64,000 bases of DNA, from positions 124,001-188,000 of IMG/VR virus record IMGVR_UViG_3300032288_004964. The stretch is one strand, 5' to 3'. Of the stretch, positions 20,954-56,371 are shown one piece after another (within the stretch, counting starts at the first letter, position 1; every line of letters starts with the position of its first letter). A program made the translations under genes and the position numbers. Under the pieces are notes generated by a model, which made no database searches, was not told the DNA's origin, and saw only the letters and a program-made list of their open reading frames with translations.

Positions 20954-21061
20954 TAATATGTTTATTTTTATGTTTTATATATCTAAATTATCATAGTTTA
21001 ATCAAAAAAAATTCCATGAGTAAAAGTTAAAAGGGAAAGTCCTTTTTATAATATATAACTT

Positions 21062-21892
21062 ATGAAATGGACAGACGAAGAAATTGAAATTTTAAAAAAC
21101 AACTATGAACAAGGTGCTAATTATCTGACTTCTTTATTAGAAAGAGATAGATCTTCTATACAACATAAATTAAATAGATTGAGACTCTTTGTATCTAAAG
21201 AAACAAAGTCAAAGATATCAAAAGTGAATTCATCTAAAAGAAAATTTGATGATTCATTTTATTCAGTTTGTGATATAACAAAAAATATTAATGAATACTC
21301 AGCTTATATTTTAGGATTCCTATGGACTGATGGATTTCTTCTGAAAAATAGAAAAACTACAGGTATTACAATTATTAAAGATGATATGATTGAGATAAAT
21401 TGGATATTTAACAAGTTTGGAACTTGGTATTCTCAAGATAGAGTTAGAAAGAATAAAAGAGAGTCTAGTACCTTAACCGCATATAATCCATATCTATTAG
21501 ATAGTTTAATTTCATATGACTTTGATAAAAAATCATATATATCTCCTGAAAAGTTATTTAGTTTAATACCACAAAAGTATTTAAAATATCTAATTAGAGG
21601 TATAATAGATGGTGATGGTTGCTTCTATCTGAATACAAAGAGATATACCTATCAATTAACTATTGCTTCTACATATGAACAGGATTGGTCATTTTATATA
21701 GACTTTTTTAATAAATTAGGATTTGAATTTAAAATACAAAAGAGAATAAATAAAAAAAGTAAATCTTCTATAATAAGATTATGTCAACGCCAAAAGATAT
21801 CTGATCTTTCTAAGTGGTTATATGATGGGTATGAGTTTGATAAAATTGGACTCTCAAGAAAATACAACAAATCTATTTTATTTGATAAATAA
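21062..21892 (+). CDS. Free-standing LAGLIDADG endonuclease
   Basis: AYILGFLWTDG and YLIRGIIDGDG; N-terminal WTDEE HTH-like segment. Confidence 0.85.
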   Translation: MKWTDEEIEILKNNYEQGANYLTSLLERDRSSIQHKLNRLRLFVSKETKSKISKVNSSKRKFDDSFYSVCDITKNINEYSAYILGFLWTDGFLLKNRKTTGITIIKDDMIEINWIFNKFGTWYSQDRVRKNKRESSTLTAYNPYLLDSLISYDFDKKSYISPEKLFSLIPQKYLKYLIRGIIDGDGCFYLNTKRYTYQLTIASTYEQDWSFYIDFFNKLGFEFKIQKRINKKSKSSIIRLCQRQKISDLSKWLYDGYEFDKIGLSRKYNKSILFDK

Positions 21893-21898
21893 TATCCT

Positions 21899-21906
21899 TA
21901 TATTTG
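21899..21906 (+). promoter_or_regulatory. Bacteroidota-type -7 box
   Basis: TATATTTG 4 nt before ATG 21911. Confidence 0.6.
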
Positions 21907-21910
21907 TAAT

Positions 21911-22516
21911 ATGAATATATGGTTTACATCAGACACACATTTTGGACACACTAACATTGCTGGTCCTAAAATTTCTAATTGGTCTTCAGGATACAGAAAC
22001 TTTAACTCTGTACATGAAATGAATATGACACTTGTTGATGGTATCAACAAATATGTTAAAGAAGATGATATACTTTATCATCTTGGTGATTGGAGCTTTG
22101 GAGGATCTCAAAATATATTTCAATTCAGAAATTATCTTATATGTAAGAATATACACTTGATTTTAGGCAACCATGATCAACATATAGTTGATAAAGAGAT
22201 AAACTATCATGATACATCATTTAATCCAGTTGAACTTTTCTCATCTGTTCAAGATGTTCTAACTTTAGATATTGGTAAAACAAAACTATTTTTATCACAT
22301 TATTCACATAGAGTTTGGTTGGGTAGTCATAAGGGTGTTATACATCTTTATGGCCACTCACACGGATCTATTCCCGATTATGGAAAATCTATGGATGTTG
22401 GTGTTGATGTTGCTTTTAAGAAGTTTGGAGAATATAGACCTTTTAATATTGGCGACATCACTAATATTATGTCAAAGAGAAGTATAGAGAAAATTGATCA
22501 CCACGGAGATATGTAG
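21911..22516 (+). CDS. Calcineurin-like metallophosphoesterase
   Basis: SDTH, LGD, GNHD, SHY, GHSH. Confidence 0.9.
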   Translation: MNIWFTSDTHFGHTNIAGPKISNWSSGYRNFNSVHEMNMTLVDGINKYVKEDDILYHLGDWSFGGSQNIFQFRNYLICKNIHLILGNHDQHIVDKEINYHDTSFNPVELFSSVQDVLTLDIGKTKLFLSHYSHRVWLGSHKGVIHLYGHSHGSIPDYGKSMDVGVDVAFKKFGEYRPFNIGDITNIMSKRSIEKIDHHGDM

Positions 22517-22517
22517 T

Positions 22518-22682
22518 ATGAGAAAATTAGAATCTGAATTATCCTATTATAAAGTTTTAATTAATTCTCAGTATGGTACAAATACCAGTACAACAATGTT
22601 AGATAAAGCCTATCAACTAAGAAGAAAAATTATCACTGTAAAAAATAGAAAAAATAAAATTAAAAAGATATTTAATATATGA
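22518..22682 (+). CDS. Small protein containing family-B DNA polymerase motif B plus R-tag
   Basis: KVLINSQYG (KxxxNSxYG); C-terminal NRKNKIKKIF; start moved to ATG 22518. Confidence 0.55.
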   Translation: MRKLESELSYYKVLINSQYGTNTSTTMLDKAYQLRRKIITVKNRKNKIKKIFNI

Positions 22683-23008
22683 TAGATAGATGGGATTGTC
22701 AAAGAGTTGTTTGTATAAAAGAATATAAAACTCTTAAAATAGGTAGTCATTATGATATTAAGGGTAGAGGTAATTTAGAATTTAATGCTGATAAAGAAGT
22801 TGGTGATAAAAGAGGATATGGATATTGTGTAGAAGATGGTCTCTATGGTTCCTACTCTGGTAAAAAAGATTGGTGGAAATTACCATATGCTGAGAAAGTT
22901 AAGTGGTATTATTTTACTGAGGAAGAAATGTCTGAATATTTTATAACAGAAGAAGAAGATTATAAAGTATATTTAAGAGACGAAAAACTAAAACAATTGC
23001 TTAATTAA
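22679..23008 (+). CDS. Hypothetical protein with C-terminal R-tag
   Basis: Ends LRDEKLKQLLN. Confidence 0.7.
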   Translation: MIDRWDCQRVVCIKEYKTLKIGSHYDIKGRGNLEFNADKEVGDKRGYGYCVEDGLYGSYSGKKDWWKLPYAEKVKWYYFTEEEMSEYFITEEEDYKVYLRDEKLKQLLN

Positions 23009-23009
23009 C

Positions 23010-24502: not shown

Positions 24503-24506
24503 TATA

Positions 24507-24977: not shown

Positions 24978-24978
24978 T

Positions 24979-26225: not shown

Positions 26226-26255
26226 ATAGTATCTTTGAATAATAATATATAATGT

Positions 26256-26732: not shown

Positions 26733-26733
26733 T

Positions 26734-27210
26734 ATGATTAGTAGATGGTTTGATTTTGATCCGTTTGAAAGTAAGATGAAGAAGTCTGCGGGAGTTATTA
26801 TTATATTAAATGGACAAAAGGTTCTACTTTGTCATCCAACTAACTCAAGATGGTTTGGTACTTACTCATTTCCTAAAGGTGGACTAAATAAAGGAGAAAC
26901 AGAAATAGATGCTGCTATTAGAGAATTAAGAGAAGAATCATCAATTGTTATTGATAAATCTAAAATTACAAATCCAAATAGTCCTATTATTGTTGATTAT
27001 GTCAATAAAAAAGGTGAAAAAAAGTATAAACAACTTTATTTATATACAGTTTATATAAATGATATTTCTGAAATTGGATTAGATTCTGAAATAATTCCAA
27101 AAGAAAAACTACAACTATCCGAGATTGATTGGTGTGGATTTTTACCTAAACAAGAAGCCAAACATAGAATTTTCTATAGAGTTGTTCATCTGTTAGATAT
27201 GATAAACTAA
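26734..27210 (+). CDS. Nudix hydrolase
   Basis: PKGGLNKGETEIDAAIRELREES Nudix box. Confidence 0.88.
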   Translation: MISRWFDFDPFESKMKKSAGVIIILNGQKVLLCHPTNSRWFGTYSFPKGGLNKGETEIDAAIRELREESSIVIDKSKITNPNSPIIVDYVNKKGEKKYKQLYLYTVYINDISEIGLDSEIIPKEKLQLSEIDWCGFLPKQEAKHRIFYRVVHLLDMIN

Positions 27211-27246
27211 ATACTATTTTATAGTATAATAAATAAAAATATTATT

Positions 27247-27591
27247 ATGCTTGATAAAATTGAATTAGATTTAAATAATCCTATATTTGTCGCTTATGTT
27301 GATGTTAAAAATATGAGTAGACAATCGGCAGAAGAATATCTTATCAGAACTAAAGAAAATTTTGAAATTTACAAAAATATCACCGTTTGGACAATTGCTT
27401 CTGATCAAACTAAAATTGAATGTGTTTATGATGGTAAGTCCAAAATTAGAGAAAAAGAATTAAATGACTTAATAAAAGAAATAAATACAAGAATAGATAT
27501 AATGTCTCAATCACATTCTTTTGAAGATTTTAAGATAAATATCAGAGATTGGAGAATAAATAATATTATAGATGGCGATAACCAAAAATAA
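27247..27591 (+). CDS. Small protein with T4 portal (gp20)-like segment plus R-tag
   Basis: IFVAYVDVKNMSRQSAEEYL versus gp20 (V/I)(W/F)Y(V/I)D.GN(M/L)P..KAE.(Y/H); C-terminal IRDWRINNII. Confidence 0.55.
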   Translation: MLDKIELDLNNPIFVAYVDVKNMSRQSAEEYLIRTKENFEIYKNITVWTIASDQTKIECVYDGKSKIREKELNDLIKEINTRIDIMSQSHSFEDFKINIRDWRINNIIDGDNQK

Positions 27592-29031: not shown

Positions 29032-29041
29032 AAAAATTCCT

Positions 29042-29049
29042 TATATTTG
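29042..29049 (+). promoter_or_regulatory. Bacteroidota-type -7 box for the tRNA
   Basis: TATATTTG 10 nt before the tRNA 5' end. Confidence 0.6.
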
Positions 29050-29059
29050 TATAAATAAT

Positions 29060-29129
29060 GGTCCGGTGGCCGAGTGTTAGGCGGAGGCTCGCAAAGCCTC
29101 ATACGGTAGCTCACAACTATCCCGGACCT
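29060..29129 (+). tRNA. tRNA-Cys(GCA), atypical
   Basis: Acceptor GGTCCGG/CCGGACC with U73; anticodon stem GAGGC/GCCTC with loop TC-GCA-AA; T stem GGTAG/CTATC; no encoded CCA. Confidence 0.75.
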
Positions 29130-29142
29130 CTAAATAATATTT

Positions 29143-29535: not shown

Positions 29536-29537
29536 AA

Positions 29538-30104: not shown

Positions 30105-30115
30105 TATATTTGTGT

Positions 30116-30778: not shown

Positions 30779-30809
30779 ATTTTAATATATAAGAAAAACT
30801 TATATTTTA

Positions 30810-34515: not shown

Positions 34516-34523
34516 TATATTTG
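34516..34523 (+). promoter_or_regulatory. Bacteroidota-type -7 box
   Basis: TATATTTG with TTTG about 18 nt upstream. Confidence 0.6.
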
Positions 34524-41000: not shown

Positions 41001-43183
41001 GTAATATTTATATAGATACTAACTCTTCAACAAATAAATTAGTATTTGGTGAAGATTTAAAATTAGAATGGCAAAGTTTATTACAATATACATATGTTGA
41101 TGTTAGTTTATCAGCTTGGTCTAATATATTGACATCTACCGGTTCTACAACATTTAATACTGATAAATTATTAATTATTAATAAATATGAAACAGATAAT
41201 TTCTTAGGAGGTGGTCAAAAAGCTTATATTATAGAATTTCATAAGAAATTAAATTATAGTTTATACTATGATATTGAGTTTGTTTCTATTACATCTAGAA
41301 GATTTTTATCACAGATTAGTAGTGATTTACAAGATTTGTCTAATACTCAAAGATCATCTTCTACTAAACAAATAGCTACTGGATATACTTATTCTAATTA
41401 TGAATCCGATTTAAACTTTAAGTTTCCTACAGATTCATATGCTAAGATTTTATTATCTGATTCAGATGTTATTGAGAATCTAAGTGGTGTTATATACACT
41501 GACTATAAAAATGAATTAGCACTTAATATAACTAAATTAGATAAAGAAGTTGAGGTTTCTATATTATCAACTACTAATTTTGCAACAGGTTCAAATAACT
41601 ATCTTTATATCGCATGTTCTGATAAACACGGTCTGAAAGAAGGAGATGGTGTTGTTTTAGAATTTACTGGAGGAACTGGTTCTTCTCAAGATTTAAATCC
41701 TCAGTATTTTGGATTTAATACAGTTGGTACTTTTCCCGGTGATGACTATAACTTATTTGTTTATACTCAATTTGGTGTACCTTCTTTAATAGGATCTGAT
41801 CCTGGTACTATTAAATATGTTAGAAAAGATCCTTTCTTTAACTATCAACCTGTTGATTTAATTGACTTAGGTGTTGATAGAAAAACTAAAATATCTATTA
41901 ATTTACAACCAGAAAATACTGATTTGGTTGGAAGTGTACATAAATTAGTTGATGTTGATTATACTAATTATAAATTTAAATTACTTGATGGATTAACACT
42001 TGATATTATTACTACCTTATATCCTTGGTTATTAGAAGCTGAGATATCAGATGCTATTATAGGAATGGATGCTAATATGAATTTAATTTGGTATACTGGT
42101 ATATGGTATTGTGGTAGATGGTTTGGTAGTTCTAATGGTAAATTAGCTACTTGGGTATCTGGTATATGGATATCAGGTGATTGGTATGGTGGTATTTGGA
42201 AATCAAATTCAATTACTAATAAGCTTATTTCAGTGGATATTCAAAAAGTATCAAATACTACAAATTCTAAATGGTATGATGGTAGATGGTATGATGGTGT
42301 TTGGGAAAATGGTACTTGGGAAAATGGTAGATGGTATGGTGGTACTTGGAGTACAGGTAACTGGTTTAATGGTATTTGGAATGATGGTACTTGGATAGAT
42401 GGTAACTTTACCGGTGGTGTTTGGGTTTTAGGAAAATGGAAGAATGGTATATTCAACACAAATAACAAACCTGCTTATTGGTTAGATGGAACTTGGGATG
42501 GTGGTGATTTTGAAAATGGCATTTGGTATAATGGTATCTGGGACCAAAAAAATAACAAAAAATCTAGATTTGGTGTTAAATCATTTAATAGCAGAACTTC
42601 TACATGGCATGCTGGTAAATGGGTCACTGGTGAATTTCATAGTAGATTAAATTTAAATGATCAAGGGTTACCTGATGTCTCATCTGTTCATAAGTTATCT
42701 ATTTGGAGAACAGGAATATGGTCAAGTGGTGATTGGTATGGTGGGATTGCATATAATATTAATTTTAGATCTGGTACATGGCATGGTGGTATTTTAGAAG
42801 ATATACAAATATGTGGTGTAGATACAACTGATAATACATTTCAGTTAAATGGTATATTTAAATTTAATATTGGAGATACCATAAAAGTCATAGATAATCA
42901 ATATGGAGGGTCTTTTTCAGTTTATGGTAGTAATGACATACCAACTACATATACGGTTTTATATCAAACAGAAGACGCTGCTGGTAAATTCTCAACAATT
43001 TATGTTGATGAAAATTTAACAGGAACTTATTCAATAACTGAAAAAGATTTGAATTTAAGAATTGCTAGTTACTTTGAAGGTTCTAATTGGAATTCTGGTA
43101 TCTGGATGAATGGAATATTTAATAATGGATTATGGGATGGTGGTATTTGGTACAATGGTGTATTTAATGGTACTTGGGGATAA
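38033..43183 (+). CDS. Large virion structural protein (BNR/YCF48-like propeller plus GxWxx pentapeptide repeats)
   Basis: IDGVTLKEGHRVLVKDQ; YTDDGGHNW Asp-box; many G-x-W-x-x repeats near the C-terminus. Confidence 0.7.
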   Translation: MWKLDEYNKWYRQTDSLTKENYDYLKQTLDSVRFYSKCLSGATYYPVNDLNNIYDILGYYVPRNWYVVSPYGTPTIPATYPRAISATTSTEYFDKYSEEYGLTLKNLFTPKRLIDDSLNNFIYVDVCSTEEIQNIADVKIGLIIDGVTLKEGHRVLVKDQRTNVTLSNLIDPDSYFYPTNYYGADNQAVGSVDTDYYYYNEFNGIYIYKNSKLVKETDLDVYADCVRYSICVKLGSTNKDKQFHLTRMRDGYYPTTSENLPIEFKEKHNWIIRNKVDYNNVLDLNYYDILKHSTQTYYDSVTDFTYSIPERLIAVGEFGGIINYQNEIEHIINNKYKVNIRSITEVNGYYWTCGDEGTLLKVSKIDFSIEKSNINVLSSLRSISFFNDLRGVLVGDFNIIYYTDDGGHNWNQINVDDFSGYSYNKVIYYSINKFYVGGDSGVFLEFILTSGEWTINKKRVAKYIDDDDEYILVEDINSIVPFTSSNWGLTYSYGTSSIPSYKEGLMLVTNNNHFIVYNLNGFVDYDFLYLDFGPTYSYGDINSVTWKSDTNEFYFAGQEIYSFDINNFQTIGSSMSNIIYGATGATLSQNVYANSIRDYNQSVLLVAGNNSLFDYATYSYLIDEVLDSTFGVRLKSKLLFLDYDIASKLNFFDDQQNYRLPDSVTFSTYSTFSTSTYLNLKPLSGETNWLTYWSDRLKTFEYYSNSPLSDSSKVEMSFTFSHTNKNTSVTFTSSIVTISYNDIYNLAPHIGDTSTFGPGVTGSPQLSRYNGYGLTAVSAPTSSHSLFLYDYLMIIKSNSLNYVGVGDLVRFESDVVSDNFIINKKVIIGTHSYLYLYTEFNQNILNDIKSSTQSITITNLNKYGNLSELETRFNLHPISNAYEFSYTTASVTGTSSLLNHIQISPKFNYLTSYYNLASEVNFSGITYSMSYEDTFLKFGYKPTYDISSYLENINSLLFSPSKEFLAMPNYNSIPGVDYQYYTGFSGLTAGNIYIDTNSSTNKLVFGEDLKLEWQSLLQYTYVDVSLSAWSNILTSTGSTTFNTDKLLIINKYETDNFLGGGQKAYIIEFHKKLNYSLYYDIEFVSITSRRFLSQISSDLQDLSNTQRSSSTKQIATGYTYSNYESDLNFKFPTDSYAKILLSDSDVIENLSGVIYTDYKNELALNITKLDKEVEVSILSTTNFATGSNNYLYIACSDKHGLKEGDGVVLEFTGGTGSSQDLNPQYFGFNTVGTFPGDDYNLFVYTQFGVPSLIGSDPGTIKYVRKDPFFNYQPVDLIDLGVDRKTKISINLQPENTDLVGSVHKLVDVDYTNYKFKLLDGLTLDIITTLYPWLLEAEISDAIIGMDANMNLIWYTGIWYCGRWFGSSNGKLATWVSGIWISGDWYGGIWKSNSITNKLISVDIQKVSNTTNSKWYDGRWYDGVWENGTWENGRWYGGTWSTGNWFNGIWNDGTWIDGNFTGGVWVLGKWKNGIFNTNNKPAYWLDGTWDGGDFENGIWYNGIWDQKNNKKSRFGVKSFNSRTSTWHAGKWVTGEFHSRLNLNDQGLPDVSSVHKLSIWRTGIWSSGDWYGGIAYNINFRSGTWHGGILEDIQICGVDTTDNTFQLNGIFKFNIGDTIKVIDNQYGGSFSVYGSNDIPTTYTVLYQTEDAAGKFSTIYVDENLTGTYSITEKDLNLRIASYFEGSNWNSGIWMNGIFNNGLWDGGIWYNGVFNGTWG

Positions 43184-43211: not shown

Positions 43212-43568
43212 ATGATTAAAAAGTATTTTGAATATATTAAGGAATCTCAAGATGACAATAAATATCAAGAATTAGAGGATAAAGTTATTTCTTTAATTCA
43301 AGATACTGTTGATACTGAAAAACAATATGATTCTGTTGATTCTTTTGTTGATGCCTTTATAAAAAAAGGTGATGTTGAGATAAGAGGTTTGATAAAACAA
43401 GATGATCTTTATCAGTTTTACTTAGATTGGAGAAATGATATAGATGAAATACTAAATAATATCAATTTCTTTGATGAGGTACCAAGTAAGATGAATTCTA
43501 TTGGACTTTATGACTATATCATAGCTGGTGTTAAAAGAGCTGTTAAAGAAGTAGTTAAAATGATTTAG
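43212..43568 (+). CDS. Hypothetical protein with CTS-like N-terminus
   Basis: MIKKYFEYIKES; AATATATA-GTTT-ATG. Confidence 0.7.
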   Translation: MIKKYFEYIKESQDDNKYQELEDKVISLIQDTVDTEKQYDSVDSFVDAFIKKGDVEIRGLIKQDDLYQFYLDWRNDIDEILNNINFFDEVPSKMNSIGLYDYIIAGVKRAVKEVVKMI

Positions 43569-44002
43569 AATATCATTTTAATATAACTCCAAGTATCAAG
43601 ATGTAAATGATAATGATTTATAACTAAATATAAATATATTAATAGTTTTGATAAGATAACTATAAATCCTAAAATTTTATCAATAAGTGTAAATTCTATC
43701 GGTCTTTTTACTAAGTTTATAATTAGAGTAATTATAAATAAAGAAAGAAATACATACCAACTATTTGTTAGTAACCCTAAAATGGACCAAGTGAATTCAA
43801 ACATCATAAGTGATGAAAATGAGTTATATAGAATAGACTCTTCTTTACTTCTAAAATCTCTTTCTTTAGGTGTTTTACCAGTTACTTTTTTGAATTTTGT
43901 ATACCACTCTTTAATATTTGTTATTTGTTTAAATTTAACTAATATGGTAAGTAATGATACTACTATGATTAGTCCAAATGTGTAATATATGTGTCCTAGC
44001 AT
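43565..44002 (-). CDS. Membrane protein
   Basis: About four hydrophobic segments. Confidence 0.7.
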   Translation of the reverse strand: MLGHIYYTFGLIIVVSLLTILVKFKQITNIKEWYTKFKKVTGKTPKERDFRSKEESILYNSFSSLMMFEFTWSILGLLTNSWYVFLSLFIITLIINLVKRPIEFTLIDKILGFIVILSKLLIYLYLVINHYHLHLDTWSYIKMIF

Positions 44003-44111
44003 CTTAAATGATTTTTTATTTTATATATAAATAAGAAGAATAGTTTGCTATTTTTAATACAAACAGAAGTGTGAAATAAATATATATAGATAATAAAATT
44101 AATTTAATTAG

Positions 44112-46871: not shown

Positions 46872-46914
46872 AGATTTTTAATTTTAATATATACATTAAA
46901 ATTATTAATAACTT

Positions 46915-48060: not shown

Positions 48061-48076
48061 AAAATAAATAATAGAA

Positions 48077-50365: not shown

Positions 50366-50366
50366 T

Positions 50367-52847
50367 ATGTTTAGTAGATTATCATCATTTTCAGGACCAT
50401 TATCGCCTGTTTTTAGACTACCAGGTGGATTTACACTTAATGGTTTAATTTTAAGATATGTTATAGGAGATACTAACTCTTATTCAGGAACTAGTAGTGT
50501 CATCGACTTACAAGGTAATTCTAATGGAACTTTATACAATGGACAAGATATTGTTGGTATTGGTCCAACATATTCACTTAATGGTTACTTAAATTTTGAT
50601 GGAGTCAATGATTATATTATGACAAATACATCACTTAATTCTAAATTGTCACCAGCAAATACATCAACAATAATATCACATTTTATTTGGATATATCCTC
50701 AGGATAATGGTGTTATTGTCACTGAACAAGGTGATACATCTTTAAATGGTGTTGGTTGGCATGATTCACAAATTGAAATAGTTTCAGGAACATTAAAGTT
50801 TGGTGTTTGGAATGGTATAATTATATCTTCGTCTATTTCAATATCTTTATATAATTGGTACTATGTTGGCTTAACTTATGATGGAATAACACTAAGAGGT
50901 TATGTAAATGGTCAACTTGCCGGATCTATTACTGGTAGTAGATCAACTCCTCAATCAGCTGGTAATGGACTACATTATGCTATTGGTGCTAATGATGGTA
51001 CAAGTTTAGGTGACGGTAGTTATGCTAAAATGAAACTTGGTGATTTTCATGTTTATAATACAGCTCTTAGTCAACAACAAATTCTTAATAATTACAATGC
51101 TACTAAAAATGATTATATTTATACAGGTAGTATGTCTATTTGGATTGATGCGAATGACCCAGCGAGTTTTTCAGGTGGTTCAATTAGTGATTTGAGTGGT
51201 AATGGTTATACACACTCTTTAGTTGCTACTTCATCTACAATATTTGGTTTCAAGTCTTTTAATTGCACAGCGGTGTCAAATAATTATATAAGAGTAAACG
51301 GAACAGGTCCATTATTACCTACATCAGGTTATACATATGTTGCTTGGGCAAGAATTTCAGCAGATTCTTCTACATATAGAACATTATATAGAAGTTCTCC
51401 AAATGATCATGCTCTTTTAGTTCAAATAAATACTGATAATTTAGGATTTTGGGATAATGATTCAAATTCTTTTAAAGATTCTGGTTATGATGTAAGCTCA
51501 ATTGAAGAAAAATGGGTTCAATATTCGGTAGTTGGTGATTCATCTAGTAGTATATTCTATATAAATGATGTAGAAGTTGGTGCAACCAATTCCGGTGCTA
51601 GTGGTAATAGACATGATTACTTTGGTGGTATTGATGGACAACCTTTTGGTTATGTTGGTAATATGATGTTATATAATAAAAAATTATCTCAATCTGAAAT
51701 TAAACAAAATTATGATGCTCTTAAAAATGTTTATAAGAATGGTGATTTTGTAATTAGTAATATAGGTATATCTTTACTACCGTCTAATGCTGGTAGTACT
51801 ATTTGGTCCGATTCAAAAGGCAATTTTAATGCCACAATGTCAGGATCGCCATCATATAATAATACTGGTTATACATTTAATGGAACTTCTCAGTATGGTA
51901 GAATTGTTAGTTCTACAGGTATTACCGATTTTACAAATACAAATAATTATACTATCGAGGTATGGACTAAACCATCTTCAGGACAACCAAATTCAACAAC
52001 AACCATTTTGGAAAAATGGAATTTAGGAAATTCATCAAATTATCCTTATACATTAAGATTTACTGAAGGTTCAAGTACTGCTTATTTTGCTTGTTATGAT
52101 GGAACTAATTTCCCTCAAGGTACTTTAACCGGAGTTTCAGTAGGTAACTGGTATCAATTAGTTGGTGTTTTTAATTTCACCACTGATGTTTTAACAGTTT
52201 ATAAAAATGGTATTTCTGCTGGAACTGCAAGTTTAGTTGGGGTTGGTGGTTTAAGTAATACAAGTCCTGTGGGAATTGCTCATAGAGTAAGTATTGACGG
52301 ATCATCTGCTGAGTTTATGTTTAAGGGTTCAATTGGTATTATAAGAATTTATAGTTCTGCTCTCAGCGCCTCTGATGTATCTAAAAACTTTGAGGCAAAT
52401 AGAAATATTTATGGAATTTCAGACTCGATCACTACAACTACTACGACTGTTGCTCCGACAACTACAACTACTACGACTGTTTTTCAAGGTGGTCCAATAA
52501 GTGAAATCTCCGTTAATCTTGGAATTAATGGTGTTGTTTATACACTAGCTGATGGACATGATTTTGAAAGTGGTCCTTTCGAACAAATGTTTTCAACAAC
52601 TACACTAAATATGTTTACTGCGTTAACCAATTATTTAGGTGATACACCTAATGCTGAATTTAATTTAGATATTACTCAAGTATTTGATAATCAAGGAAAT
52701 CTAGATGGTTATTCAATTAATTTATATCTAAGTACCCCAGGGAATGGATACAATGTTGGTGATATTATAACCATACCTGGAAGTGAAATTGGTGGAACCG
52801 ATAACACTGATGATGACTTAATAATAACTGTTACTTCAATATCATAG
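50367..52847 (+). CDS. Multi-LamG (concanavalin A-like) adhesin/fibre tip protein
   Basis: Three repeats of FDG..DY/FNG..Y...W..V...Y.NG...YN.ALS..I..NY; Thr-rich linker; start at MFSRLS (or 50358). Confidence 0.8.
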   Translation: MFSRLSSFSGPLSPVFRLPGGFTLNGLILRYVIGDTNSYSGTSSVIDLQGNSNGTLYNGQDIVGIGPTYSLNGYLNFDGVNDYIMTNTSLNSKLSPANTSTIISHFIWIYPQDNGVIVTEQGDTSLNGVGWHDSQIEIVSGTLKFGVWNGIIISSSISISLYNWYYVGLTYDGITLRGYVNGQLAGSITGSRSTPQSAGNGLHYAIGANDGTSLGDGSYAKMKLGDFHVYNTALSQQQILNNYNATKNDYIYTGSMSIWIDANDPASFSGGSISDLSGNGYTHSLVATSSTIFGFKSFNCTAVSNNYIRVNGTGPLLPTSGYTYVAWARISADSSTYRTLYRSSPNDHALLVQINTDNLGFWDNDSNSFKDSGYDVSSIEEKWVQYSVVGDSSSSIFYINDVEVGATNSGASGNRHDYFGGIDGQPFGYVGNMMLYNKKLSQSEIKQNYDALKNVYKNGDFVISNIGISLLPSNAGSTIWSDSKGNFNATMSGSPSYNNTGYTFNGTSQYGRIVSSTGITDFTNTNNYTIEVWTKPSSGQPNSTTTILEKWNLGNSSNYPYTLRFTEGSSTAYFACYDGTNFPQGTLTGVSVGNWYQLVGVFNFTTDVLTVYKNGISAGTASLVGVGGLSNTSPVGIAHRVSIDGSSAEFMFKGSIGIIRIYSSALSASDVSKNFEANRNIYGISDSITTTTTTVAPTTTTTTTVFQGGPISEISVNLGINGVVYTLADGHDFESGPFEQMFSTTTLNMFTALTNYLGDTPNAEFNLDITQVFDNQGNLDGYSINLYLSTPGNGYNVGDIITIPGSEIGGTDNTDDDLIITVTSIS

Positions 52848-52986
52848 GAACTGATGAATCTGTTAAATAAAAAATTTATTTTTTAATTGATACTTATAAT
52901 ATAATGATATAGCAATTGTCAAGTAGCAAAAAATAGAAAAAATTAATATTTGAAATATAATATATAATAAAAAATAACAATAAAAT

Positions 52987-53220
52987 ATGCAAATATCATT
53001 AACAAATCCGAAGAAAGTAGTTTTACAAGAAGAAAAAAGTAAAACAGTAACGACACTAACAGTATCACGAATTGTGGACTTACCGAAGAAGAAAATGGTT
53101 AGAGCTTTTGTAGAAGAATTAGACGAGCCTGTAGTATTATGGGAAGGCGCGGCTTATGATTCAATTGGTCAATGGACTGATGCAAATGTTGAAGCTAGAT
53201 TAGCTGAATTGTATTCATAA
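52987..53220 (+). CDS. Small hypothetical protein (possibly fibre-associated)
   Basis: 77 aa with a late box and its own terminator. Confidence 0.6.
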   Translation: MQISLTNPKKVVLQEEKSKTVTTLTVSRIVDLPKKKMVRAFVEELDEPVVLWEGAAYDSIGQWTDANVEARLAELYS

Positions 53221-53238
53221 TCTCTTTTGAAACTAATT

Positions 53239-53265
53239 AAAACCCTCTTAAAAAGAGGGTTTTTT
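53239..53265 (+). terminator. Intrinsic terminator
   Basis: AAAACCCTCTT-AAA-AAGAGGGTTTTTT. Confidence 0.8.
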
Positions 53266-53270
53266 ATTTT

Positions 53271-53297
53271 AAACTAAATTGTAATAAATCATATAAT
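53271..53297 (+). promoter_or_regulatory. AAACTA-N15-TATAAT putative promoter
   Basis: Same architecture at 27204-27230, 44020-44046(-), 56273-56299(-) and 20974-20999(-). Confidence 0.55.
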
Positions 53298-53313
53298 AAA
53301 TAAAACTTTTTTA

Positions 53314-54195
53314 ATGTATTCAATATTTCACATAGAAGGAGGAATTGGTAAGAATATTTTAGCAACCGCAGTTATTGATTCCCTCAAGAAAACAGACCCA
53401 GAAAGAAAAATCATTTTAGTTTCAGCTTGGCCTCAAGTTTGGTTTAACAACCCAAACATTGAACAAATATTCCCAATGGGTCAAGTCGCTAACTTTTATA
53501 AAAACTTTATCAAAGACCAAGATGTAAAAATATTCCGTGTTGATCCTTATCATACAGAAGATTATATCCTAAATAAAAAACATTTAATTGAAATTTGGTG
53601 TGATTTAGTTGGAGCTAAATATGATGGAGAACTACCTAAACTTTACTTTTCACCTTTAGAGTTGGAAGGAATTAGATCAAAAATTTTACAAGGAGTAAGT
53701 AAACCTATTTTTTTACTACACACAAATGGTGGTGGTTCTGGTCCTAAATCAAGACCTTATTCTTGGTATAGAGACATACCAATGCAAAATGCTGTAGATA
53801 TTGTTAACTACTTCAAAAATGATTATCATATCTATCAACTTGGATATCAAGGACAATCTTTAATACCAGGTTGTAATAAATTAACTTTAGAAACTAGAGA
53901 AATTTTAGCAGCTCCTCTTTTTTCTAAAAAGAGATTATTAATTGATTCTTTTTCTCAACATGCTTCAGTTGCACTTGGTATGCAATCAGTTGTTTGTTGG
54001 GTTGGAAATAAACCTGAGGTTTTAGGTTATGATAGTCATCTTAATATAAAACCTGTTGCTAAACCCGTATTTGACACTTACCACTCATCTTACTTAGATG
54101 ATTTTGATATTGGAGGTAATCCAGTTCAATTCCCTTATGATAAATTGAAAGTATTTGATTCAAACGAAATAATAAATAAATTATTAACATTATGA
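53314..54195 (+). CDS. Glycosyltransferase, GT9/heptosyltransferase-like (GT-B)
   Basis: GGIGKNILAT.VI..LK...P; F.NNPNI; LLIDSFSQHASVALG. Confidence 0.7.
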   Translation: MYSIFHIEGGIGKNILATAVIDSLKKTDPERKIILVSAWPQVWFNNPNIEQIFPMGQVANFYKNFIKDQDVKIFRVDPYHTEDYILNKKHLIEIWCDLVGAKYDGELPKLYFSPLELEGIRSKILQGVSKPIFLLHTNGGGSGPKSRPYSWYRDIPMQNAVDIVNYFKNDYHIYQLGYQGQSLIPGCNKLTLETREILAAPLFSKKRLLIDSFSQHASVALGMQSVVCWVGNKPEVLGYDSHLNIKPVAKPVFDTYHSSYLDDFDIGGNPVQFPYDKLKVFDSNEIINKLLTL

Positions 54196-54998
54196 GAAAA
54201 ATTCATTATATAGGTGGTCTACCGAGAAGTGGGTCAACTTTATTAACAAACATTCTTTTACAGAATCCAAAATTTGCTACAACAGCAACATCTTCTCTTT
54301 TAGACTTTCTCTTACAAGTAAGAGATAATTGGAATAAATTAGAAGGACATAAAGTTTATGAAGAAGGCCAGGATAAATGGGCAGTTATCAGAGCAATTAT
54401 GTATAACTATCACAAAACTGATAAAGAAGTTATCTTCGATAAAAACAGAGGTTGGTCTACACATATTGAATTTATGGAAAAAGCAACTGGTGAAGGAGTT
54501 AAAATAATTGCTTGTGTTAGAAATCTTGAAGATATCTGTTCTTCTTTTGAAAAACTATTTAGAAAGAATAGAGCTGATGGTGAAATACACGGTGAATTTT
54601 CTAATCCTAAAATGAAAAATAGAGAAGGTAGAGTTGGTGTTTGGACATCAGATGAAGGAGTTATAGGAAGACCTTATATTTCTTTATTAGATACAATCCA
54701 AAGAGGTTTAGGTGATAGAATATTATTCTTCCCATATGAAGAATGGTCATCTAATCCTGACTTCTGGTTTAAGAAATTATATGAGTTTGTAGGTGAAGAA
54801 TATTACCAACATGATTTTAATAATATCGAACAAGTTATTAGAGAAAATGATGCTGGTTATGGTTGGGGATCTGATTTGCATGAAATTAAAAATGGTAGAT
54901 TATTACCAGCTAAATCAGATGCTATTGAAATATTAGGTAGAGATTGGTTTGTTAAATTACATGACACAGAATTCTGGAAGACTAAGAAAAAGAAATAA
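54192..54998 (+). CDS. PAPS-dependent sulfotransferase
   Basis: 5'-PSB loop GLPRSGSTLL; 3'-PB IIACVRN..DI.SS; YEE...P. Confidence 0.85.
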   Translation: MRKIHYIGGLPRSGSTLLTNILLQNPKFATTATSSLLDFLLQVRDNWNKLEGHKVYEEGQDKWAVIRAIMYNYHKTDKEVIFDKNRGWSTHIEFMEKATGEGVKIIACVRNLEDICSSFEKLFRKNRADGEIHGEFSNPKMKNREGRVGVWTSDEGVIGRPYISLLDTIQRGLGDRILFFPYEEWSSNPDFWFKKLYEFVGEEYYQHDFNNIEQVIRENDAGYGWGSDLHEIKNGRLLPAKSDAIEILGRDWFVKLHDTEFWKTKKKK

Positions 54999-54999
54999 T

Positions 55000-55032
55000 A
55001 AAAAAACCTCTCAAATTTGAGAGGTTTTTTTT
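55000..55032. terminator. Bidirectional intrinsic terminator
   Basis: AAAAAACCTCTCAAATTTGAGAGGTTTTTT palindrome. Confidence 0.85.
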
Positions 55033-55237
55033 ATTCATCCATTTTAATAAATTTATACCAAAATCTTTCATGTATAAAGTAGATAATAGGTTTTAAGACT
55101 AACTCACTAACACCTAATAAAGAAGCAATTTTAAGAGGTGCCCCTAACAATGTAGCTGTTATAACTGTTGTTAAAGTTCCTAAAATTCTATATGTTATAG
55201 TTTTATAAAGGTGTCTCTTTATAGCTTTATCCTTCAT
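55031..55237 (-). CDS. DUF2061-like small membrane protein
   Basis: RHLYKTITYRILGT...K.IIYFIHER.W. Confidence 0.8.
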   Translation of the reverse strand: MKDKAIKRHLYKTITYRILGTLTTVITATLLGAPLKIASLLGVSELVLKPIIYFIHERFWYKFIKMDE

Positions 55238-55685
55238 TTACCATTAGATTTTTTATTACATCTTCTTGTATAGACTCGTGAACCATTGTTCTCCAAGAAT
55301 CATCACCATTCTTAATAGAATCTCTGATTTTTGTAGCTGAGATAAATGCGATGTCACCTGGAGGTGTAAACTCATTTATTTCATAACCAACACCTCTTCC
55401 ATAATTAACAGATTCAATATCAGGGATAATCATTACTTTAACATCATCATTTTTAGCAGCATGATACTTCTCAATCATTTCTACTGTTTGTTCAGTTGTA
55501 AAAGGATTCTTTTCATCTGGTTCGATGTCTCTAACCATAATTAAAGCTGGTATACCTGCATCTAATTTTTGTTGAATTAATTCAATATGTCCATAATGAT
55601 AAGGTTGGTATCTACCTACAAAGATAGCATACTTTTTATCTGGATTCTTAGTGGGTTCTCCACCGTGATTTACTTTTGACCACAT
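55227..55685 (-). CDS. HxGH nucleotidyltransferase (cytidylyltransferase-like)
   Basis: FVGRYQPYHYGH; NPF; YGRGVGY; ISATKIR. Confidence 0.8.
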   Translation of the reverse strand: MWSKVNHGGEPTKNPDKKYAIFVGRYQPYHYGHIELIQQKLDAGIPALIMVRDIEPDEKNPFTTEQTVEMIEKYHAAKNDDVKVMIIPDIESVNYGRGVGYEINEFTPPGDIAFISATKIRDSIKNGDDSWRTMVHESIQEDVIKNLMVNEG

Positions 55686-55686
55686 A

Positions 55687-56268
55687 TTATTTGTTATTTT
55701 TTAATATTAACTCAGTAAGAAAGTTTACATTTTTTTCTAAATCTTCTTCTGTGTTATTTTTTAGTACTGTTGCATTTTGAGGAGTTTCAAAAGGAGATGA
55801 GATTCCTGTAAATTCTTTAATTTCACCAGCTCTTGCTTTTTTGTAAAGACCTTTAGGGTCTCTAGTTTCACAAGTAGAAAGTTCAGCATCAATGAAAATT
55901 TCCATAAATCCTTCACCAATAATTTCTTTAGCTTGGTTTCTATTCTTTTCAAATGGAGAGATAAAAGAACAGATTACAATTAGACCAGCATCATTCATAA
56001 GTTTACAAACTTCTGAAACCCTTCTAATGTTTTCTACTCTTGCTTCTTCTGAGAATCCTAAATCTTTGTTAAGACCCATTCTAGTGTTATCACCATCTAA
56101 AATATAGGTGTGATATCCCAAACTGATTAGTTTTTCTTCAACTAAATTAGCAATAGTTGATTTTCCTGAACCGGATAATCCAGACATCCAAATGGTACAA
56201 GCCTTTTGATTTTTGATAGATTCACGGTTTTCTTTTGTTGTTTTAAAATTGTGCGTAGTTATATTCAT
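55687..56268 (-). CDS. cysC: Adenylyl-sulfate (APS) kinase
   Basis: GLSGSGKST; LDGD..R; R.ENIRR; FISP; RDPKGLY.KAR.GEI..FTGI. Confidence 0.95.
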   Translation of the reverse strand: MNITTHNFKTTKENRESIKNQKACTIWMSGLSGSGKSTIANLVEEKLISLGYHTYILDGDNTRMGLNKDLGFSEEARVENIRRVSEVCKLMNDAGLIVICSFISPFEKNRNQAKEIIGEGFMEIFIDAELSTCETRDPKGLYKKARAGEIKEFTGISSPFETPQNATVLKNNTEEDLEKNVNFLTELILKNNK

Positions 56269-56371
56269 ATGAATTATATTTTACAGAGTCTATTTGTTTT
56301 AAAAAATCACATAAAAGAATTTTTTTACATTATAATTTTAATATATACTCTATAAAAAATATTTTTTAACT

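What the first reader, a model, noticed from the sequence alone, without database searches (positions are those of the whole stretch)
20974..56299. A third promoter class AAAC[TA]A-N15-TATAA[TA] links cysK to the sulfation cassette
Exact N15 spacing at 27204-27230 (+, portal fragment), 44020-44046 (-, membrane protein), 53271-53297 (+, GT/sulfotransferase) and 56273-56299 (-, cysC operon). Spacing is N14 at 20974-20999 (-, cysK). All sulfur-pathway transcription units share it despite being 35 kb apart, suggesting a regulon read by a second phage or host alternative sigma factor.
Basis: seen in the sequence. Interest (0 to 1): 0.6.

Follow-up and report, generated by a model that had tools for sequence, protein, structure and literature searches.

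The report
Phage middle-gene promoter class, ECF-sigma type
The repeated AAAC…TATAAT signal is a real, conserved two-part promoter found about 30 times across this 385-kb freshwater jumbo phage. It drives DNA-replication and accessory genes as well as the sulfur genes, is probably read by the phage's own ECF-type sigma factor, and so marks a timing class rather than a sulfur regulon.

Summary
All five sites are at the stated coordinates. The window alone gives weak support: 4 exact N15 matches against 0.71 expected, reached by 3 of 100 shuffles. The whole 385-kb phage genome settles it. In its 24 kb of non-coding DNA, AAAC[AT][AT]-Nx-TATAA[AT] occurs 20 times at N15 and 8 at N16, against about 1.9 at other spacings; coding DNA shows no peak. 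The peak recurs in a distant relative. In orthologous upstream regions only the AAAC and TATAA boxes stay conserved.

It is one of three promoter classes:
- Host Bacteroidota sigma-A type (TTTG/TAnnTTTG), on early genes and tRNAs.
- A -10-only TTAATATATA class, on capsid, portal, protease and terminase genes.
- This bipartite class.

Its roughly 30 members precede RNR, DnaB-like and XPD-like helicases, SbcC, thioredoxin, glycosyltransferases, cysK, cysC and two sulfotransferase cassettes. The sulfur genes are co-timed, but the class is not sulfur-specific.

The phage encodes one ECF-type sigma factor, outside the window. A conserved copy of this promoter precedes its gene, and the -35 box carries the ECF hallmark AAC. 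The likely mechanism is therefore an autoregulated phage ECF sigma directing host RNA polymerase. No RNA data exist, so transcription starts are untested.

The parts
20974..20999 (-). Class-3 promoter of cysK (AAACTA-N14-TATAAA), ending 20 nt upstream of the ATG.
   Evidence: exact match. AAACT[TA] at the same N14 distance from TATAAA is kept in cysK orthologues of related phages; 7 of 10 unique orthologous upstream regions carry the dyad, against 0.15 in shuffles.
20081..20953 (-). cysK-like cysteine synthase (290 aa).
   Evidence: PALP domain, 4.8e-69; cysKM/cysK 314-328 bits, just below the equivalog cut-offs.
27204..27230 (+). Class-3 promoter (AAACTA-N15-TATAAT), ending 16 nt upstream of the ATG at 27247.
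   Evidence: PWM score 15.0, above the threshold that allows about 1 false positive.
27247..27591 (+). 114-aa ORF of unknown function. There is no evidence that it is a portal fragment.
   Evidence: Searches find no significant family. One search places the portal gene at genome 35912-37615 (-).
44020..44046 (-). Class-3 promoter (AAACTA-N15-TATAAA), ending 17 nt upstream of the ATG at 44002.
   Evidence: PWM score 17.4.
43565..44002 (-). 145-aa hydrophobic protein, a predicted multi-pass membrane protein.
   Evidence: translation. Searches find no family hits.
53239..53263 (.). Intrinsic-terminator-like hairpin immediately upstream of the promoter. It isolates the 293-aa/sulfotransferase unit.
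   Evidence: 11-bp stem followed by a T run, detected on both strands.
53271..53297 (+). Class-3 promoter (AAACTA-N15-TATAAT), ending 16 nt upstream of the ATG at 53314.
   Evidence: PWM score 16.3; relatives L107 and L108 carry a dyad ahead of the orthologous cassette.
53314..54998 (+). Two-gene sulfation cassette: a 293-aa protein with no family assignment (53314-54195) and a 268-aa sulfotransferase (54192-54998).
   Evidence: Sulfotransfer_3 1e-12 and Sulfotransfer_1 5e-10; a paralogous cassette (37% identity) at genome 16340-18046 also has a class-3 promoter.
55000..55031 (.). Terminator-like hairpin between the two convergent class-3 units.
   Evidence: 14-bp stem followed by a T run.
56273..56299 (-). 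Class-3 promoter of the cysC operon (AAACAA-N15-TATAAT). It ends only 4 nt upstream of the ATG, which implies a leaderless mRNA.
   Evidence: PWM score 16.3. AAACAA is kept at the same distance from the ATG in all 4 orthologous loci, while the -10 is degenerate in 3 of them.
55031..56268 (-). cysC operon: APS kinase (55687-56268), a 152-aa cytidylyl/adenylyltransferase-like protein (55227-55685) and a 68-aa ORF (55031-55237).
   Evidence: APS_kinase 2e-65 and CTP_transf_like 5.5e-08; apsK 240 bits, above its cut-off; in relative L105 these genes and the 293-aa/sulfotransferase genes form a single same-strand operon.
6159..6186 (-). Candidate class-3 site (AAACTT-N16-TATAAT), ending 52 nt upstream of the 160-aa ORF 5624-6106 and overlapping the start of a divergent gene.
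   Evidence: PWM score 16.4. No footprint was made, so membership is uncertain.
41260..41285 (-). N14 pattern match inside, and antisense to, the 1716-aa ORF. Probably chance and not counted as a member.
   Evidence: fully coding, with no downstream gene within 3.5 kb; matches in coding DNA are at background level.

Best explanation
The five sites belong to a genome-wide bipartite promoter class of about 30 members in a 385-kb Mahaphage-clade jumbo phage of freshwater Bacteroidota.

The class has a -35-like box AAAC(T/A)(T/A) preceded by T, a 15-16 nt spacer (14 at cysK), and a -10-like box (A/G)TATAA(T/A). It is one of three tiers:
- Host sigma-A-type promoters (TTTG/TAnnTTTG) on early genes, tRNAs and the operon leading into the sigma gene.
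- This class, on DNA-replication, nucleotide-metabolism, glycan-modification and sulfur genes (early/middle).
- A -10-only TTAATATATA class on head and packaging genes (late).

The most likely reader is host core RNA polymerase carrying the phage's single ECF-type sigma factor (202 aa, genome 235740-236348, outside the window). That sigma would first be made by read-through from early host-type promoters and would then amplify itself from its own class-3 promoter.

The cysK, cysC and sulfotransferase units are therefore co-timed with replication genes rather than forming a sulfur-specific regulon.

Shown: the existence, spacing constraint, conservation and gene content of the class; the presence and type of the sigma gene; and the promoter in front of it. 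Inferred: that this sigma reads the class, the temporal order, and transcription starts, including leaderless mRNAs where the -10 box ends 4-5 nt from the ATG.
For: **Real and spacing-constrained**
- Spacing histograms peak only at N15/N16, and only in non-coding, sense-oriented DNA.
- A PWM scan gives 23-33 sites where 1-5 false positives are expected.
- The same peak appears in the 270-kb relative G003.

**Functional constraint**
- An unbiased MAFFT alignment of 30 distinct upstream regions of DnaB-like helicase orthologues shows only the AAAC and TATAA columns (and the ATG) at 90% conservation or more.
- The dyad is present in 25 of 30 DnaB, 18 of 25 XPD, 7 of 10 cysK and 10 of 16 sigma upstream regions. 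Shuffles give about 0.1-0.5.

**Distinct from the other classes**
- The 116 TTAATATATA sites show no AAAC box at any preferred spacing. They precede the major head, portal, protease and terminase genes.
- TAnnTTTG sites with an upstream TTTG(G) precede tRNAs, ligase, UvdE and a 5'-3' exonuclease. They match the Bacteroidetes consensus (PMC6847099).

**Sigma assignment**
- Only one clear sigma gene is present, with region 2 plus region 4_2. It scores 76 bits on TIGR02937 sigma70-ECF against a 42.9-bit cut-off, and SigW is its best solved relative.
- No RNA polymerase beta-subunit domain was found.
- A class-3 promoter lies 97 nt upstream of the sigma gene (genome 235615-235642). It is conserved in relatives and in G003, where sigma is only 46% identical. 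Autoregulation is typical of ECF sigmas (PMC5758882).
- The -35 box has the ECF hallmark AAC followed by a T-rich stretch (PMC1540707).
- Aligned to E. coli sigma-E, the phage sigma keeps K at 171 (contact to C-31) and R at 149 (T-tract). It has N in place of R176 (the G-35 contact), which matches the missing upstream G.
- The recognition helix KSQIRNGR is invariant across most orthologues of 46-82% identity.
- No terminator-like site separates the early ligase operon from the sigma gene.
Against: - No transcription start or expression data exist. All 20 sequencing runs that hold this DNA are DNA metagenomes.
- The TATAAT-like -10 is unlike the CGT-type -10 of characterised ECF sigmas.
- S at position 172 would predict G, not A, at -34 under the Lane and Darst correlation.
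- F175 is replaced by R.
- Co-occurrence of sigma and motif across relatives is co-conservation, not covariation, so it cannot exclude another reader.
- A weak region-2-like ORF (genome 41341-41739, E = 0.002-0.007) is a second possible sigma-like protein.
- The temporal labels rest on gene content only.
- Gene calls are my own simple ORF calls.
Confidence: 0.6

Rival explanations
1. Sigma appropriation, as at phage T4 middle promoters. The TATAAT-like box is read by the host primary sigma, and the AAAC box is bound by a phage activator (MotA-like, perhaps with an AsiA-like co-factor) that replaces -35 recognition.
For: - The three-tier layout and the gene content (replication and nucleotide metabolism) mirror T4 early/middle/late organisation.
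- If the transcript starts at the ATG in the sites where the -10 box ends 4 nt upstream, the AAAC box centres near -29 to -30, where the MotA box sits (the T4 positions are from my own knowledge).
Against: - No AsiA or MotCF domain was detected, although that search had no positive control.
- Bacteroidetes sigma-A needs TAnnTTTG and is reported not to use TATAAT-type promoters (PMC6847099).
- This model does not explain why the one ECF sigma gene carries a conserved copy of the promoter.
Confidence: 0.15
2. The class is read by a host alternative sigma factor, such as a host ECF sigma, which the phage exploits. The phage sigma would then serve another, undetected promoter set.
For: - The phage sigma's nearest families include the Bacteroides-expansion ECF family, TIGR02985 at 94.6 bits. 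Host paralogues with similar specificity are therefore plausible.
- The -35 AAC box is generic to ECF sigmas.
Against: - Motif and phage sigma are conserved together across phages as divergent as 46% sigma identity, and the promoter sits in front of the phage sigma gene itself.
- No other spacing-constrained motif emerged that the phage sigma could read, though I ran no exhaustive motif discovery.
- A lytic programme that depends on a stress-gated host ECF sigma seems fragile (inference).
Confidence: 0.1
3. One reading: a dedicated sulfur-metabolism regulon that links cysK to the sulfation cassette.
For: - All four sulfur-related units found carry the motif: cysK, the cysC operon and two sulfotransferase cassettes.
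- In relative L105, cysC and the sulfotransferase genes are fused into one operon behind this promoter.
- Thioredoxin is also a member.
Against: - Most members are unrelated to sulfur: RNR small chain, DnaB-like and XPD-like helicases, SbcC/Rad50, Fpg, topoisomerase, NADAR, a methyltransferase, GT1 and GT2, and the sigma gene itself.
- The two sulfotransferase cassettes are paralogues, so they are not independent.
- cysK (sulfide assimilation) and PAPS-dependent sulfation are different branches of sulfur metabolism (established biochemistry).
Confidence: 0.03
4. Chance or compositional artefact of an AT-rich (28.7% GC) genome.
For: - In the window alone, 3 of 100 shuffles reach 4 matches, and the pattern was defined after the fact.
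- TATAA[AT] is very common, with 2654 copies in the genome.
Against: - The N15/N16 peak is sharp and confined to non-coding, sense-oriented DNA.
- It is replicated in another genome.
- The boxes are conserved while spacers diverge.
Confidence: 0.01

Closest known systems
ECF (group IV) sigma-dependent promoters, e.g. E. coli sigma-E GGAACTT-N16-TCAAA and B. subtilis sigma-W TGAAAC-N16-CGTA
   Same: - An invariant AAC in the -35 box followed by a T-rich stretch.
- A strict 15-16 nt spacer.
- A copy of the promoter in front of the sigma gene, implying autoregulation.
- The candidate reader is a two-domain sigma (regions 2 and 4).
Sources.
   Different: - No upstream G; the phage sigma has N where R176 contacts G-35.
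- The -10 box is TATAAT-like rather than CGT- or TCAAA-like.
- It is encoded by a lytic jumbo phage and appears to run a whole temporal gene class rather than a stress regulon.
- No anti-sigma partner was identified.
Phage-encoded sigma cascades (Bacillus phage SPO1 gp28 and gp33/34; T4 gp55 late sigma with the TATAAATA promoter)
   Same: - A switch from host-sigma early promoters to phage-specific promoter classes.
- The late class here (TTAATATATA, with no -35 box) resembles T4 late promoters in architecture.
- The class under study occupies the 'middle' position and drives replication genes.
Sources. The SPO1 and T4 facts are from my own knowledge and the PMC13401047 abstract.
   Different: - A different host phylum (Bacteroidota), different motifs, and an ECF-type rather than gp28- or gp55-type sigma.
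- Nothing here has been tested biochemically.
T4 middle promoters (MotA box plus sigma-70 -10, using AsiA/MotA sigma appropriation)
   Same: A bipartite promoter with a non-canonical upstream box near -30 and a TAnnnT-type -10 box, placed in front of replication and nucleotide-metabolism genes.
   Different: - The box sequence is AAAC(T/A)(T/A), not TGCTT.
- The spacing is 15-16 nt rather than 11-13.
- No MotA or AsiA homologue was detected (inconclusive).
- A dedicated sigma gene carrying the same promoter argues for direct sigma recognition.
Bacteroidetes primary-sigma promoter (-33 TTTG / -7 TAnnTTTG)
   Same: - It coexists in the same genome.
- The positional rule is shared: the -7/-10 box ends either 4-5 nt or about 16-26 nt before the ATG.
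   Different: Class-3 sites lack both the TTTG of the -7 element and the -33 TTTG. Their boxes are AAAC and TATAAT.
Huge phages of the Mahaphage clade (Al-Shayeb et al. 2020, PMC7162821; GenBank LR745206.1 and LR756502.1)
   Same: - These are the closest database genomes: terminase 78-79% identical, sigma 71-77% identical.
- They are predicted to have Bacteroidetes hosts, which fits the host-type promoters seen here.
   Different: - Those genomes are 634-642 kb and this record is 385 kb.
- The paper's only mention of 'promoter' concerns CRISPR spacers that target host intergenic regions. My limited literature search found no description of promoter classes for this clade.

Membership tests
ECF (group IV) sigma-dependent promoter | A conserved AAC motif in the -35 element. 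| tested here: met
   AAAC is 92-96% conserved in the PWM of 23-26 sites. It is at least 90% conserved in the MAFFT footprint. The definition comes from PMC1540707 and PMC5758882.
ECF (group IV) sigma-dependent promoter | An upstream G region (G at -35, contacted by the conserved R176 equivalent). | tested here: not met
   The positions before AAAC are T/A-rich with 1-8% G. The phage sigma has N at the R176-equivalent position, so the deviation is internally consistent.
ECF (group IV) sigma-dependent promoter | A T-rich stretch downstream of AAC, with R149 retained in the sigma. | tested here: met
   AAAC is followed by (T/A)(A/T)(A/T)T. In the DnaB orthologues the consensus is AAACTTA. The R149 equivalent is R.
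ECF (group IV) sigma-dependent promoter | A group-specific -10 box, typically CGT-like, about 16 nt from the -35 box. | tested here: inconclusive
   The spacing of 15-16 nt fits. The -10 box is (A/G)TATAA(T/A), unlike characterised ECF -10 elements. ECF -10 elements are group-specific, so this does not exclude membership.
ECF (group IV) sigma-dependent promoter | The promoter is present upstream of the cognate sigma gene (autoregulation). | tested here: met
   AAACTT-N16-TATAAA lies at genome 235615-235642, 97 nt before the sigma ATG. It is found in 10 of 16 orthologous loci and in the distant relative G003.
ECF (group IV) sigma-dependent promoter | Sigma-dependent initiation at a mapped transcription start. 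| not testable with these tools
   No RNA run holds this phage, and no cultured host is known.
ECF-type sigma-70 family protein (the candidate reader, genome 235740-236348) | Only regions 2 and 4 are present, and the protein matches the ECF superfamily model above its cut-off. | tested here: met
   Sigma70_r2 4e-15 and Sigma70_r4_2 4e-11. TIGR02937 scores 76.3 bits against a 42.9-bit cut-off. The best PDB relative is SigW, 5wuq, at 2e-17.
T4-type middle promoter (MotA/AsiA sigma appropriation) | A MotA box (TGCTT core) 11-13 bp upstream of the -10 box, plus MotA and AsiA proteins. | tested here: not met
   The box is AAAC(T/A)(T/A) at 15-16 nt. The AsiA and MotCF Pfam searches of the genome found nothing, but had no positive control.
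Bacteroidetes sigma-A promoter | A -7 element TAnnTTTG, with or without a -33 TTTG. | tested here: not met
   Class-3 -10 boxes are TATAA(T/A) without TTTG. Sites with TAnnTTTG form a separate set in front of other genes.
Dedicated sulfur-metabolism regulon | The motif is restricted to, or strongly centred on, sulfur genes. | tested here: not met
   Only 4 of about 30 units are sulfur-related. The others encode replication, repair, nucleotide-metabolism and glycosyltransferase functions.

The most novel reading that the evidence does not exclude
A clade-wide transcription programme in Mahaphage-type huge phages of Bacteroidota. A phage-encoded, self-amplifying ECF-type sigma with an atypical specificity (AAAC -35 without the upstream G, and an E. 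coli-like TATAAT -10) would re-programme a host polymerase whose own sigma cannot use TATAAT promoters. It would run the entire replication and auxiliary-metabolism gene class, including PAPS-dependent sulfation. About 40% of its transcripts would be leaderless. That would be the first defined promoter code and sigma cascade for this uncultivated clade, and an orthogonal sigma/promoter pair for Bacteroidota.
Probability: 0.5. Interest if true: 0.6.

Novelty: new member of a known kind. Interest (0 to 1): 0.45.

Why it matters
Huge phages of the Mahaphage clade are known only from metagenomes, and their gene-expression logic has not been described. The analysis yields a three-tier promoter code: host sigma-A type, an AAAC/TATAAT class tied to a phage ECF sigma, and a -10-only late class.

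- **Annotation.** Any gene in these genomes can be assigned a provisional temporal class from sequence alone. The sulfur genes (cysK, cysC and the sulfotransferases) then appear as replication-phase functions, which suggests that host or phage glycans are sulfated while the genome is replicating rather than during virion assembly.
- **Testability.** The model gives a directly testable sigma/promoter pair, which could also serve as an orthogonal expression module in Bacteroidota.
- **Limits.** It is not a new principle. Phage sigma cascades and autoregulated ECF sigmas are both well known.

Tried and rejected
- **RNA evidence.** The look-up of sequencing runs listed 24 runs. The 20 that hold the stretch are DNA metagenomes kept as contigs (lake, freshwater, groundwater, plankton) and none is RNA. 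I therefore did not use read laying, because contigs cannot show transcript starts.
- **Relatives through the 1676-aa neighbour.** This search found only one weak 30-residue match. I switched to the DnaB-like, XPD-like, cysC, cysK and sigma proteins.
- **First PWM scan.** It used antisense upstream regions as the control. That control is contaminated by divergent promoters sharing the same intergenic regions, and the scan range excluded sites close to the ATG. I redid it with shuffled controls.
- **Box-anchored conservation table.** It is circular for the boxes, because the sequences were selected by the same regular expression. I replaced it with an unbiased MAFFT footprint.
- **Eukaryotic giant virus.** I considered this because of the collagen, ankyrin and LRR genes and the genome size. 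No NCLDV capsid hit was found, but that search had no positive control. The idea was dropped once phage head, portal and terminase genes, a sigma factor and Bacteroidetes-type promoters were found.
- **Phage multisubunit RNA polymerase.** No beta-subunit domain was found, and the search's controls were positive.
- **AsiA/MotA.** Nothing was found, but without a positive control this is inconclusive.
- **PAPS reductase/CysD.** Absent, with positive controls.
- **Rfam and ARAGORN on the window.** Neither found anything.
- **Handling notes.** No alternative genetic code was needed: code 11 gives 94% coding.

Full report
**Observation**

The exact pattern AAAC[AT]A-N15-TATAA[AT] occurs four times in the window, at exactly the coordinates and strands given. 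The N14 version occurs at 20974-20999 (-), plus one unlisted intragenic site at 41260-41285 (-).

Within the window the excess is modest: 4 matches against 0.71 expected, reached by 3 of 100 dinucleotide shuffles. The pattern was also defined after the fact, so the window alone would not be convincing.

**What the sequence is**

The window is bases 124001-188000 of a single 385,333-bp IMG/VR virus record with 28.7% GC and a CheckV completeness estimate of 95%.

- My own ORF calling under code 11 gives 462 genes and 94% coding density.
- The genome encodes a major head protein, head protease, portal and large terminase.
- No RNA polymerase beta-subunit domain was detected.
- The nearest GenBank records are LR745206.1 and LR756502.1, uncultured huge phages of 634-642 kb. 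Their terminase is 78-79% identical. They match the 634- and 642-kb genomes that Al-Shayeb et al. 2020 place in the Mahaphage clade, with predicted Bacteroidetes hosts (PMC7162821).
- Near-identical DNA occurs in lake, freshwater, groundwater and plankton metagenomes from 14 studies. No RNA run holds it.
- Start codons are not preceded by Shine-Dalgarno sequences but by A-rich stretches, as described for Bacteroidetes (PMC6847099).

**Is the dyad more than chance?**

Yes, and decisively so once the whole genome is used.

- In 90-nt upstream windows read in the sense of the gene, the spacing between AAAC[AT]A and TATAA[AT] is 15 nt eleven times and 16 nt eight times. Every other spacing from 5 to 30 occurs 0-3 times.
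- For the slightly wider box AAAC[AT][AT], restricted to the 24,016 non-coding bases, the counts are 20 (N15) and 8 (N16) against a mean of 1.9 for the other spacings (Poisson P about 2e-14 and 7e-4).
- The 361 kb of coding DNA shows no peak at N15/N16, at 10 each, within a 4-15 scatter across spacings.
- A PWM built from the sites and scanned against dinucleotide-preserving shuffles finds 23-26 sites where about 1 false positive is expected, and 32-33 where about 5 are expected.
- The consensus is t-AAAC-(T/A)(A/T), then 15-16 nt, then (A/G)TATAA(T/A).
- The distance from the -10 box to the ATG is bimodal: 4-5 nt in about 40% of sites and 16-26 nt in most of the rest.

**Conservation in related phages**

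Relatives are numerous in IMG/VR, with contigs up to 483 kb.

- An unbiased MAFFT alignment of 30 distinct 75-nt regions upstream of DnaB-like helicase orthologues (64-89% protein identity) shows only three column groups at 90% conservation or more: the AAAC box, the TATAA box and the start codon. The spacer and flanks vary.
- The dyad is present in 25 of 30 DnaB, 18 of 25 XPD-like helicase, 7 of 10 cysK and 10 of 16 sigma-gene upstream regions. Shuffles give 0.1-0.5, and the reverse complement gives 0-1.
- For cysC, the AAACAA box keeps its distance to the ATG in all four orthologous loci, while the -10 box is degenerate in three.
- I fetched the whole 270-kb relative G003, whose XPD-like helicase and sigma are only 46% identical. 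It reproduces the non-coding peak at N15 = 12 and N16 = 8 against 1.3.

**Three promoter classes**

1. **Late, -10-only class.** The commonest upstream motif is (T)TTAATATATA, with 116 genes carrying AATATATA within 65 nt upstream. It has no upstream partner box: AAAC shows no preferred spacing there. It precedes the major head protein, protease, portal and terminase, and the very large structural-looking ORFs of the window, including the 1676-aa gene divergent from cysC. This looks like a late class in the manner of T4 late promoters.
2. **Host-type class.** There are 87 non-coding TAnnTTTG elements, many with TTTG(G) about 19 nt upstream. They precede tRNA genes, NAD-dependent ligase, UvdE, a 5'-3' exonuclease and a NUDIX-kinase. 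This is the Bacteroidetes primary-sigma consensus. It supports a Bacteroidota host and an early class.
It precedes:
   - ribonucleotide reductase small chain, a DnaB-like helicase, an XPD/DEAD_2 helicase and SbcC/Rad50;
   - thioredoxin, NADAR, a thymidine-kinase-like ATPase and a methyltransferase;
   - GT2 and GT1 glycosyltransferases and DUF2452;
   - more weakly, Fpg and a type II topoisomerase subunit;
   - cysK, the cysC operon and the 293-aa/sulfotransferase cassette.

**The sulfur link**

All sulfur-related units I could find are members.

- They include a second, paralogous cassette (294 aa plus sulfotransferase, 37% identical) at genome 16340-18046, outside the window.
- In relative L105, five genes form one operon behind the cysC promoter: cysC, the small nucleotidyltransferase, a 145-aa ORF, the 293-aa gene and the sulfotransferase. 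The PAPS-making and PAPS-using genes are therefore functionally tied.
- Sulfur units are still only 4 of about 30 members, and two of the four are paralogues.
- cysK belongs to a different branch of sulfur metabolism.
- No PAPS-reductase/CysD domain is present.
- The correct statement is that the sulfur genes share the temporal class of the replication genes. The motif does not define a sulfur regulon.
- Terminator-like hairpins at 53239-53263 and 55000-55031 delimit the two convergent units.

**Who reads it**

- The genome has one clear sigma gene (genome 235740-236348), with regions 2 and 4_2 only. It scores 76 bits on the ECF superfamily model against a 42.9-bit cut-off. Its best family and structure matches are SigW and the Bacteroides-expansion ECF family.
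- The gene lies at the end of a same-strand gene string that starts with host-type promoters at the ligase gene. No terminator-like site was detected in between.
- Its own 133-nt upstream gap holds AAACTT-N16-TATAAA, 97 nt before the ATG.
- That promoter is conserved upstream of sigma orthologues and in the distant G003.
- Promoter copies in front of the sigma gene are the classical signature of ECF autoregulation, and are the basis on which ECF promoter specificities are usually predicted (PMC5758882).
- The -35 box has the ECF hallmark AAC followed by a T-rich stretch (PMC1540707).

I aligned the phage sigma to E. coli sigma-E. I inferred the residue numbering from a three-residue offset in chain 1or7_A, using the sigma-E sequence from memory, and it reproduces the residues named in the paper.

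| sigma-E residue | Role | Phage residue | Reading |
|---|---|---|---|
| R171 | contact to C-31 | K | compatible |
| R149 | T-tract | R | compatible |
| R176 | contact to G-35 | N | consistent with the missing upstream G |
| S172 | -34 specificity | S | would predict G, not the observed A |
| F175 | contact at A-33 | R | not conserved |

The recognition helix KSQIRNGR is essentially invariant from 46% to 82% overall identity, even though G003's sigma has an insertion of about 80 residues just before it. This is co-conservation with an unchanged -35 box, not covariation.

The alternatives are a T4-like activator working with host sigma (0.15) and a host alternative sigma (0.1). Near-zero weight remains for a sulfur-specific regulon or for chance.

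**Positional rule and leaderless mRNAs (inference)**

In F. johnsoniae the -7 element ends 4-5 nt before the transcription start. In this phage all three classes place the end of their -7/-10 box either 4-5 nt or about 16-28 nt before the ATG.

The first group should therefore give mRNAs that begin at, or next to, the start codon. The cysC promoter is of this type. The cysK, 27204, 44020 and 53271 promoters would give leaders of roughly 10-15 nt. This is untested.

**Limits**

- There are no expression data of any kind.
- The gene calls are my own.
- The temporal labels rest on gene content.
- The related phages are not independent samples, although the variable spacers show that the boxes are under selection.
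- The AsiA and MotA searches lacked positive controls.
- The literature search was limited. I found no description of promoter classes for this clade.

**Verdict**

It is a new member of a well-known kind of system, the phage sigma cascade with ECF-type autoregulated promoters, in an uncultivated clade where nothing comparable has been described.

Noticed in passing
whole genome; in the window e.g. 56372 (1676-aa gene), 44112, 46915, 21062, 16044: The dominant promoter-like motif is (T)TTAATATATA with no -35 partner. AATATATA lies within 65 nt upstream of 116 genes. It precedes the major head protein, protease, portal, terminase and the giant structural-looking ORFs, so it is probably the late class.
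   Followed up: partly
whole genome; in the window e.g. 21899-21906, 29041-29048, 30105-30112, 34516-34523: Classic Bacteroidetes sigma-A promoters (TTTG(G)-about 19 nt-TAnnTTTG) occur before tRNA genes and early-looking genes. There are 87 non-coding TAnnTTTG elements. This points to a Bacteroidota host.
   Followed up: partly
all three promoter classes genome-wide; window 56273-56299 is an example: Between about a fifth and half of promoters, depending on class, end 4-5 nt before the ATG: 50 of 116 for class 1, about 40% for class 3, and about a fifth of the non-coding TAnnTTTG sites. This implies unusually frequent leaderless mRNAs. In F. johnsoniae, 87% of transcripts are reported to have leaders longer than 10 nt.
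   Followed up: partly
genome 235643-235739 (L013:15643-15739), the leader of the sigma gene; G003 68678-68722: The 97-nt leader between the sigma gene's class-3 promoter and its ATG carries repeated ACGGCAA(T)-like words. The last one abuts the start codon, and they are conserved in relatives. The distant relative G003 has AATAGCA repeats in the same place. These may be an operator or a translational control element.
   Followed up: no
genome 41341-41739 (-) (L004:1341-1739): A small ORF (94-132 aa) has weak similarity to sigma region 2 only (E = 0.002-0.007). It is a candidate gp55-like late sigma for the -10-only class, but this is speculative.
   Followed up: partly
window 29056-29132 (+): A host-type promoter (TATATTTG at 29041-29048) is followed by a cloverleaf-folding RNA of about 70 nt. 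It has a 7-bp acceptor-like stem, a class-II-like D arm, a possible GCA (Cys) anticodon and a non-canonical T loop. The fold is -30.2 kcal/mol with z = -2.3. Neither ARAGORN nor Rfam calls it.
   Followed up: partly
genome 16309-18046 (L002:16309-18046), outside the window: A second cassette paralogous to window 53314-54998, a 294-aa protein (37% identical) plus a 272-aa sulfotransferase, also sits behind a class-3 promoter that ends 4 nt before the ATG.
   Followed up: yes
L105:3970-7163 (relative IMGVR_UViG_3300032321_002024): In this relative, five genes lie in one same-strand operon behind the cysC promoter: cysC, the small nucleotidyltransferase, a 145-aa ORF, the 293-aa gene and the sulfotransferase. 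In the window they form two convergent units.
   Followed up: partly
window 55227-55685 (-): A 152-aa cytidylyl/NMN-adenylyltransferase-like protein is co-transcribed with APS kinase. No ATP sulfurylase or CysD was found in the genome, so it could be a minimal sulfate-activating or other nucleotidyl-transfer enzyme. Its function is open.
   Followed up: no
window 21062-21892 (+): A 276-aa ORF divergent from cysK has a weak LAGLIDADG_3 match (E = 8.5e-4, below the cut-off). A 445-aa homing-endonuclease-like gene lies at genome 65932-67269. Mobile endonucleases seem common in this genome.
   Followed up: no
window 44112-63999 (+): A run of very large ORFs carries collagen repeats, Laminin_G_3/concanavalin-like domains and BspA-type LRRs. 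An endosialidase-chaperone domain occurs further upstream, at 220-1608. These are likely fibre or adhesin proteins, mostly behind late-class promoters.
   Followed up: no
G003 68723-69583 (distant relative's sigma gene): The orthologous ECF sigma carries an insertion of about 80 residues within region 4, just before an unchanged recognition helix.
   Followed up: no
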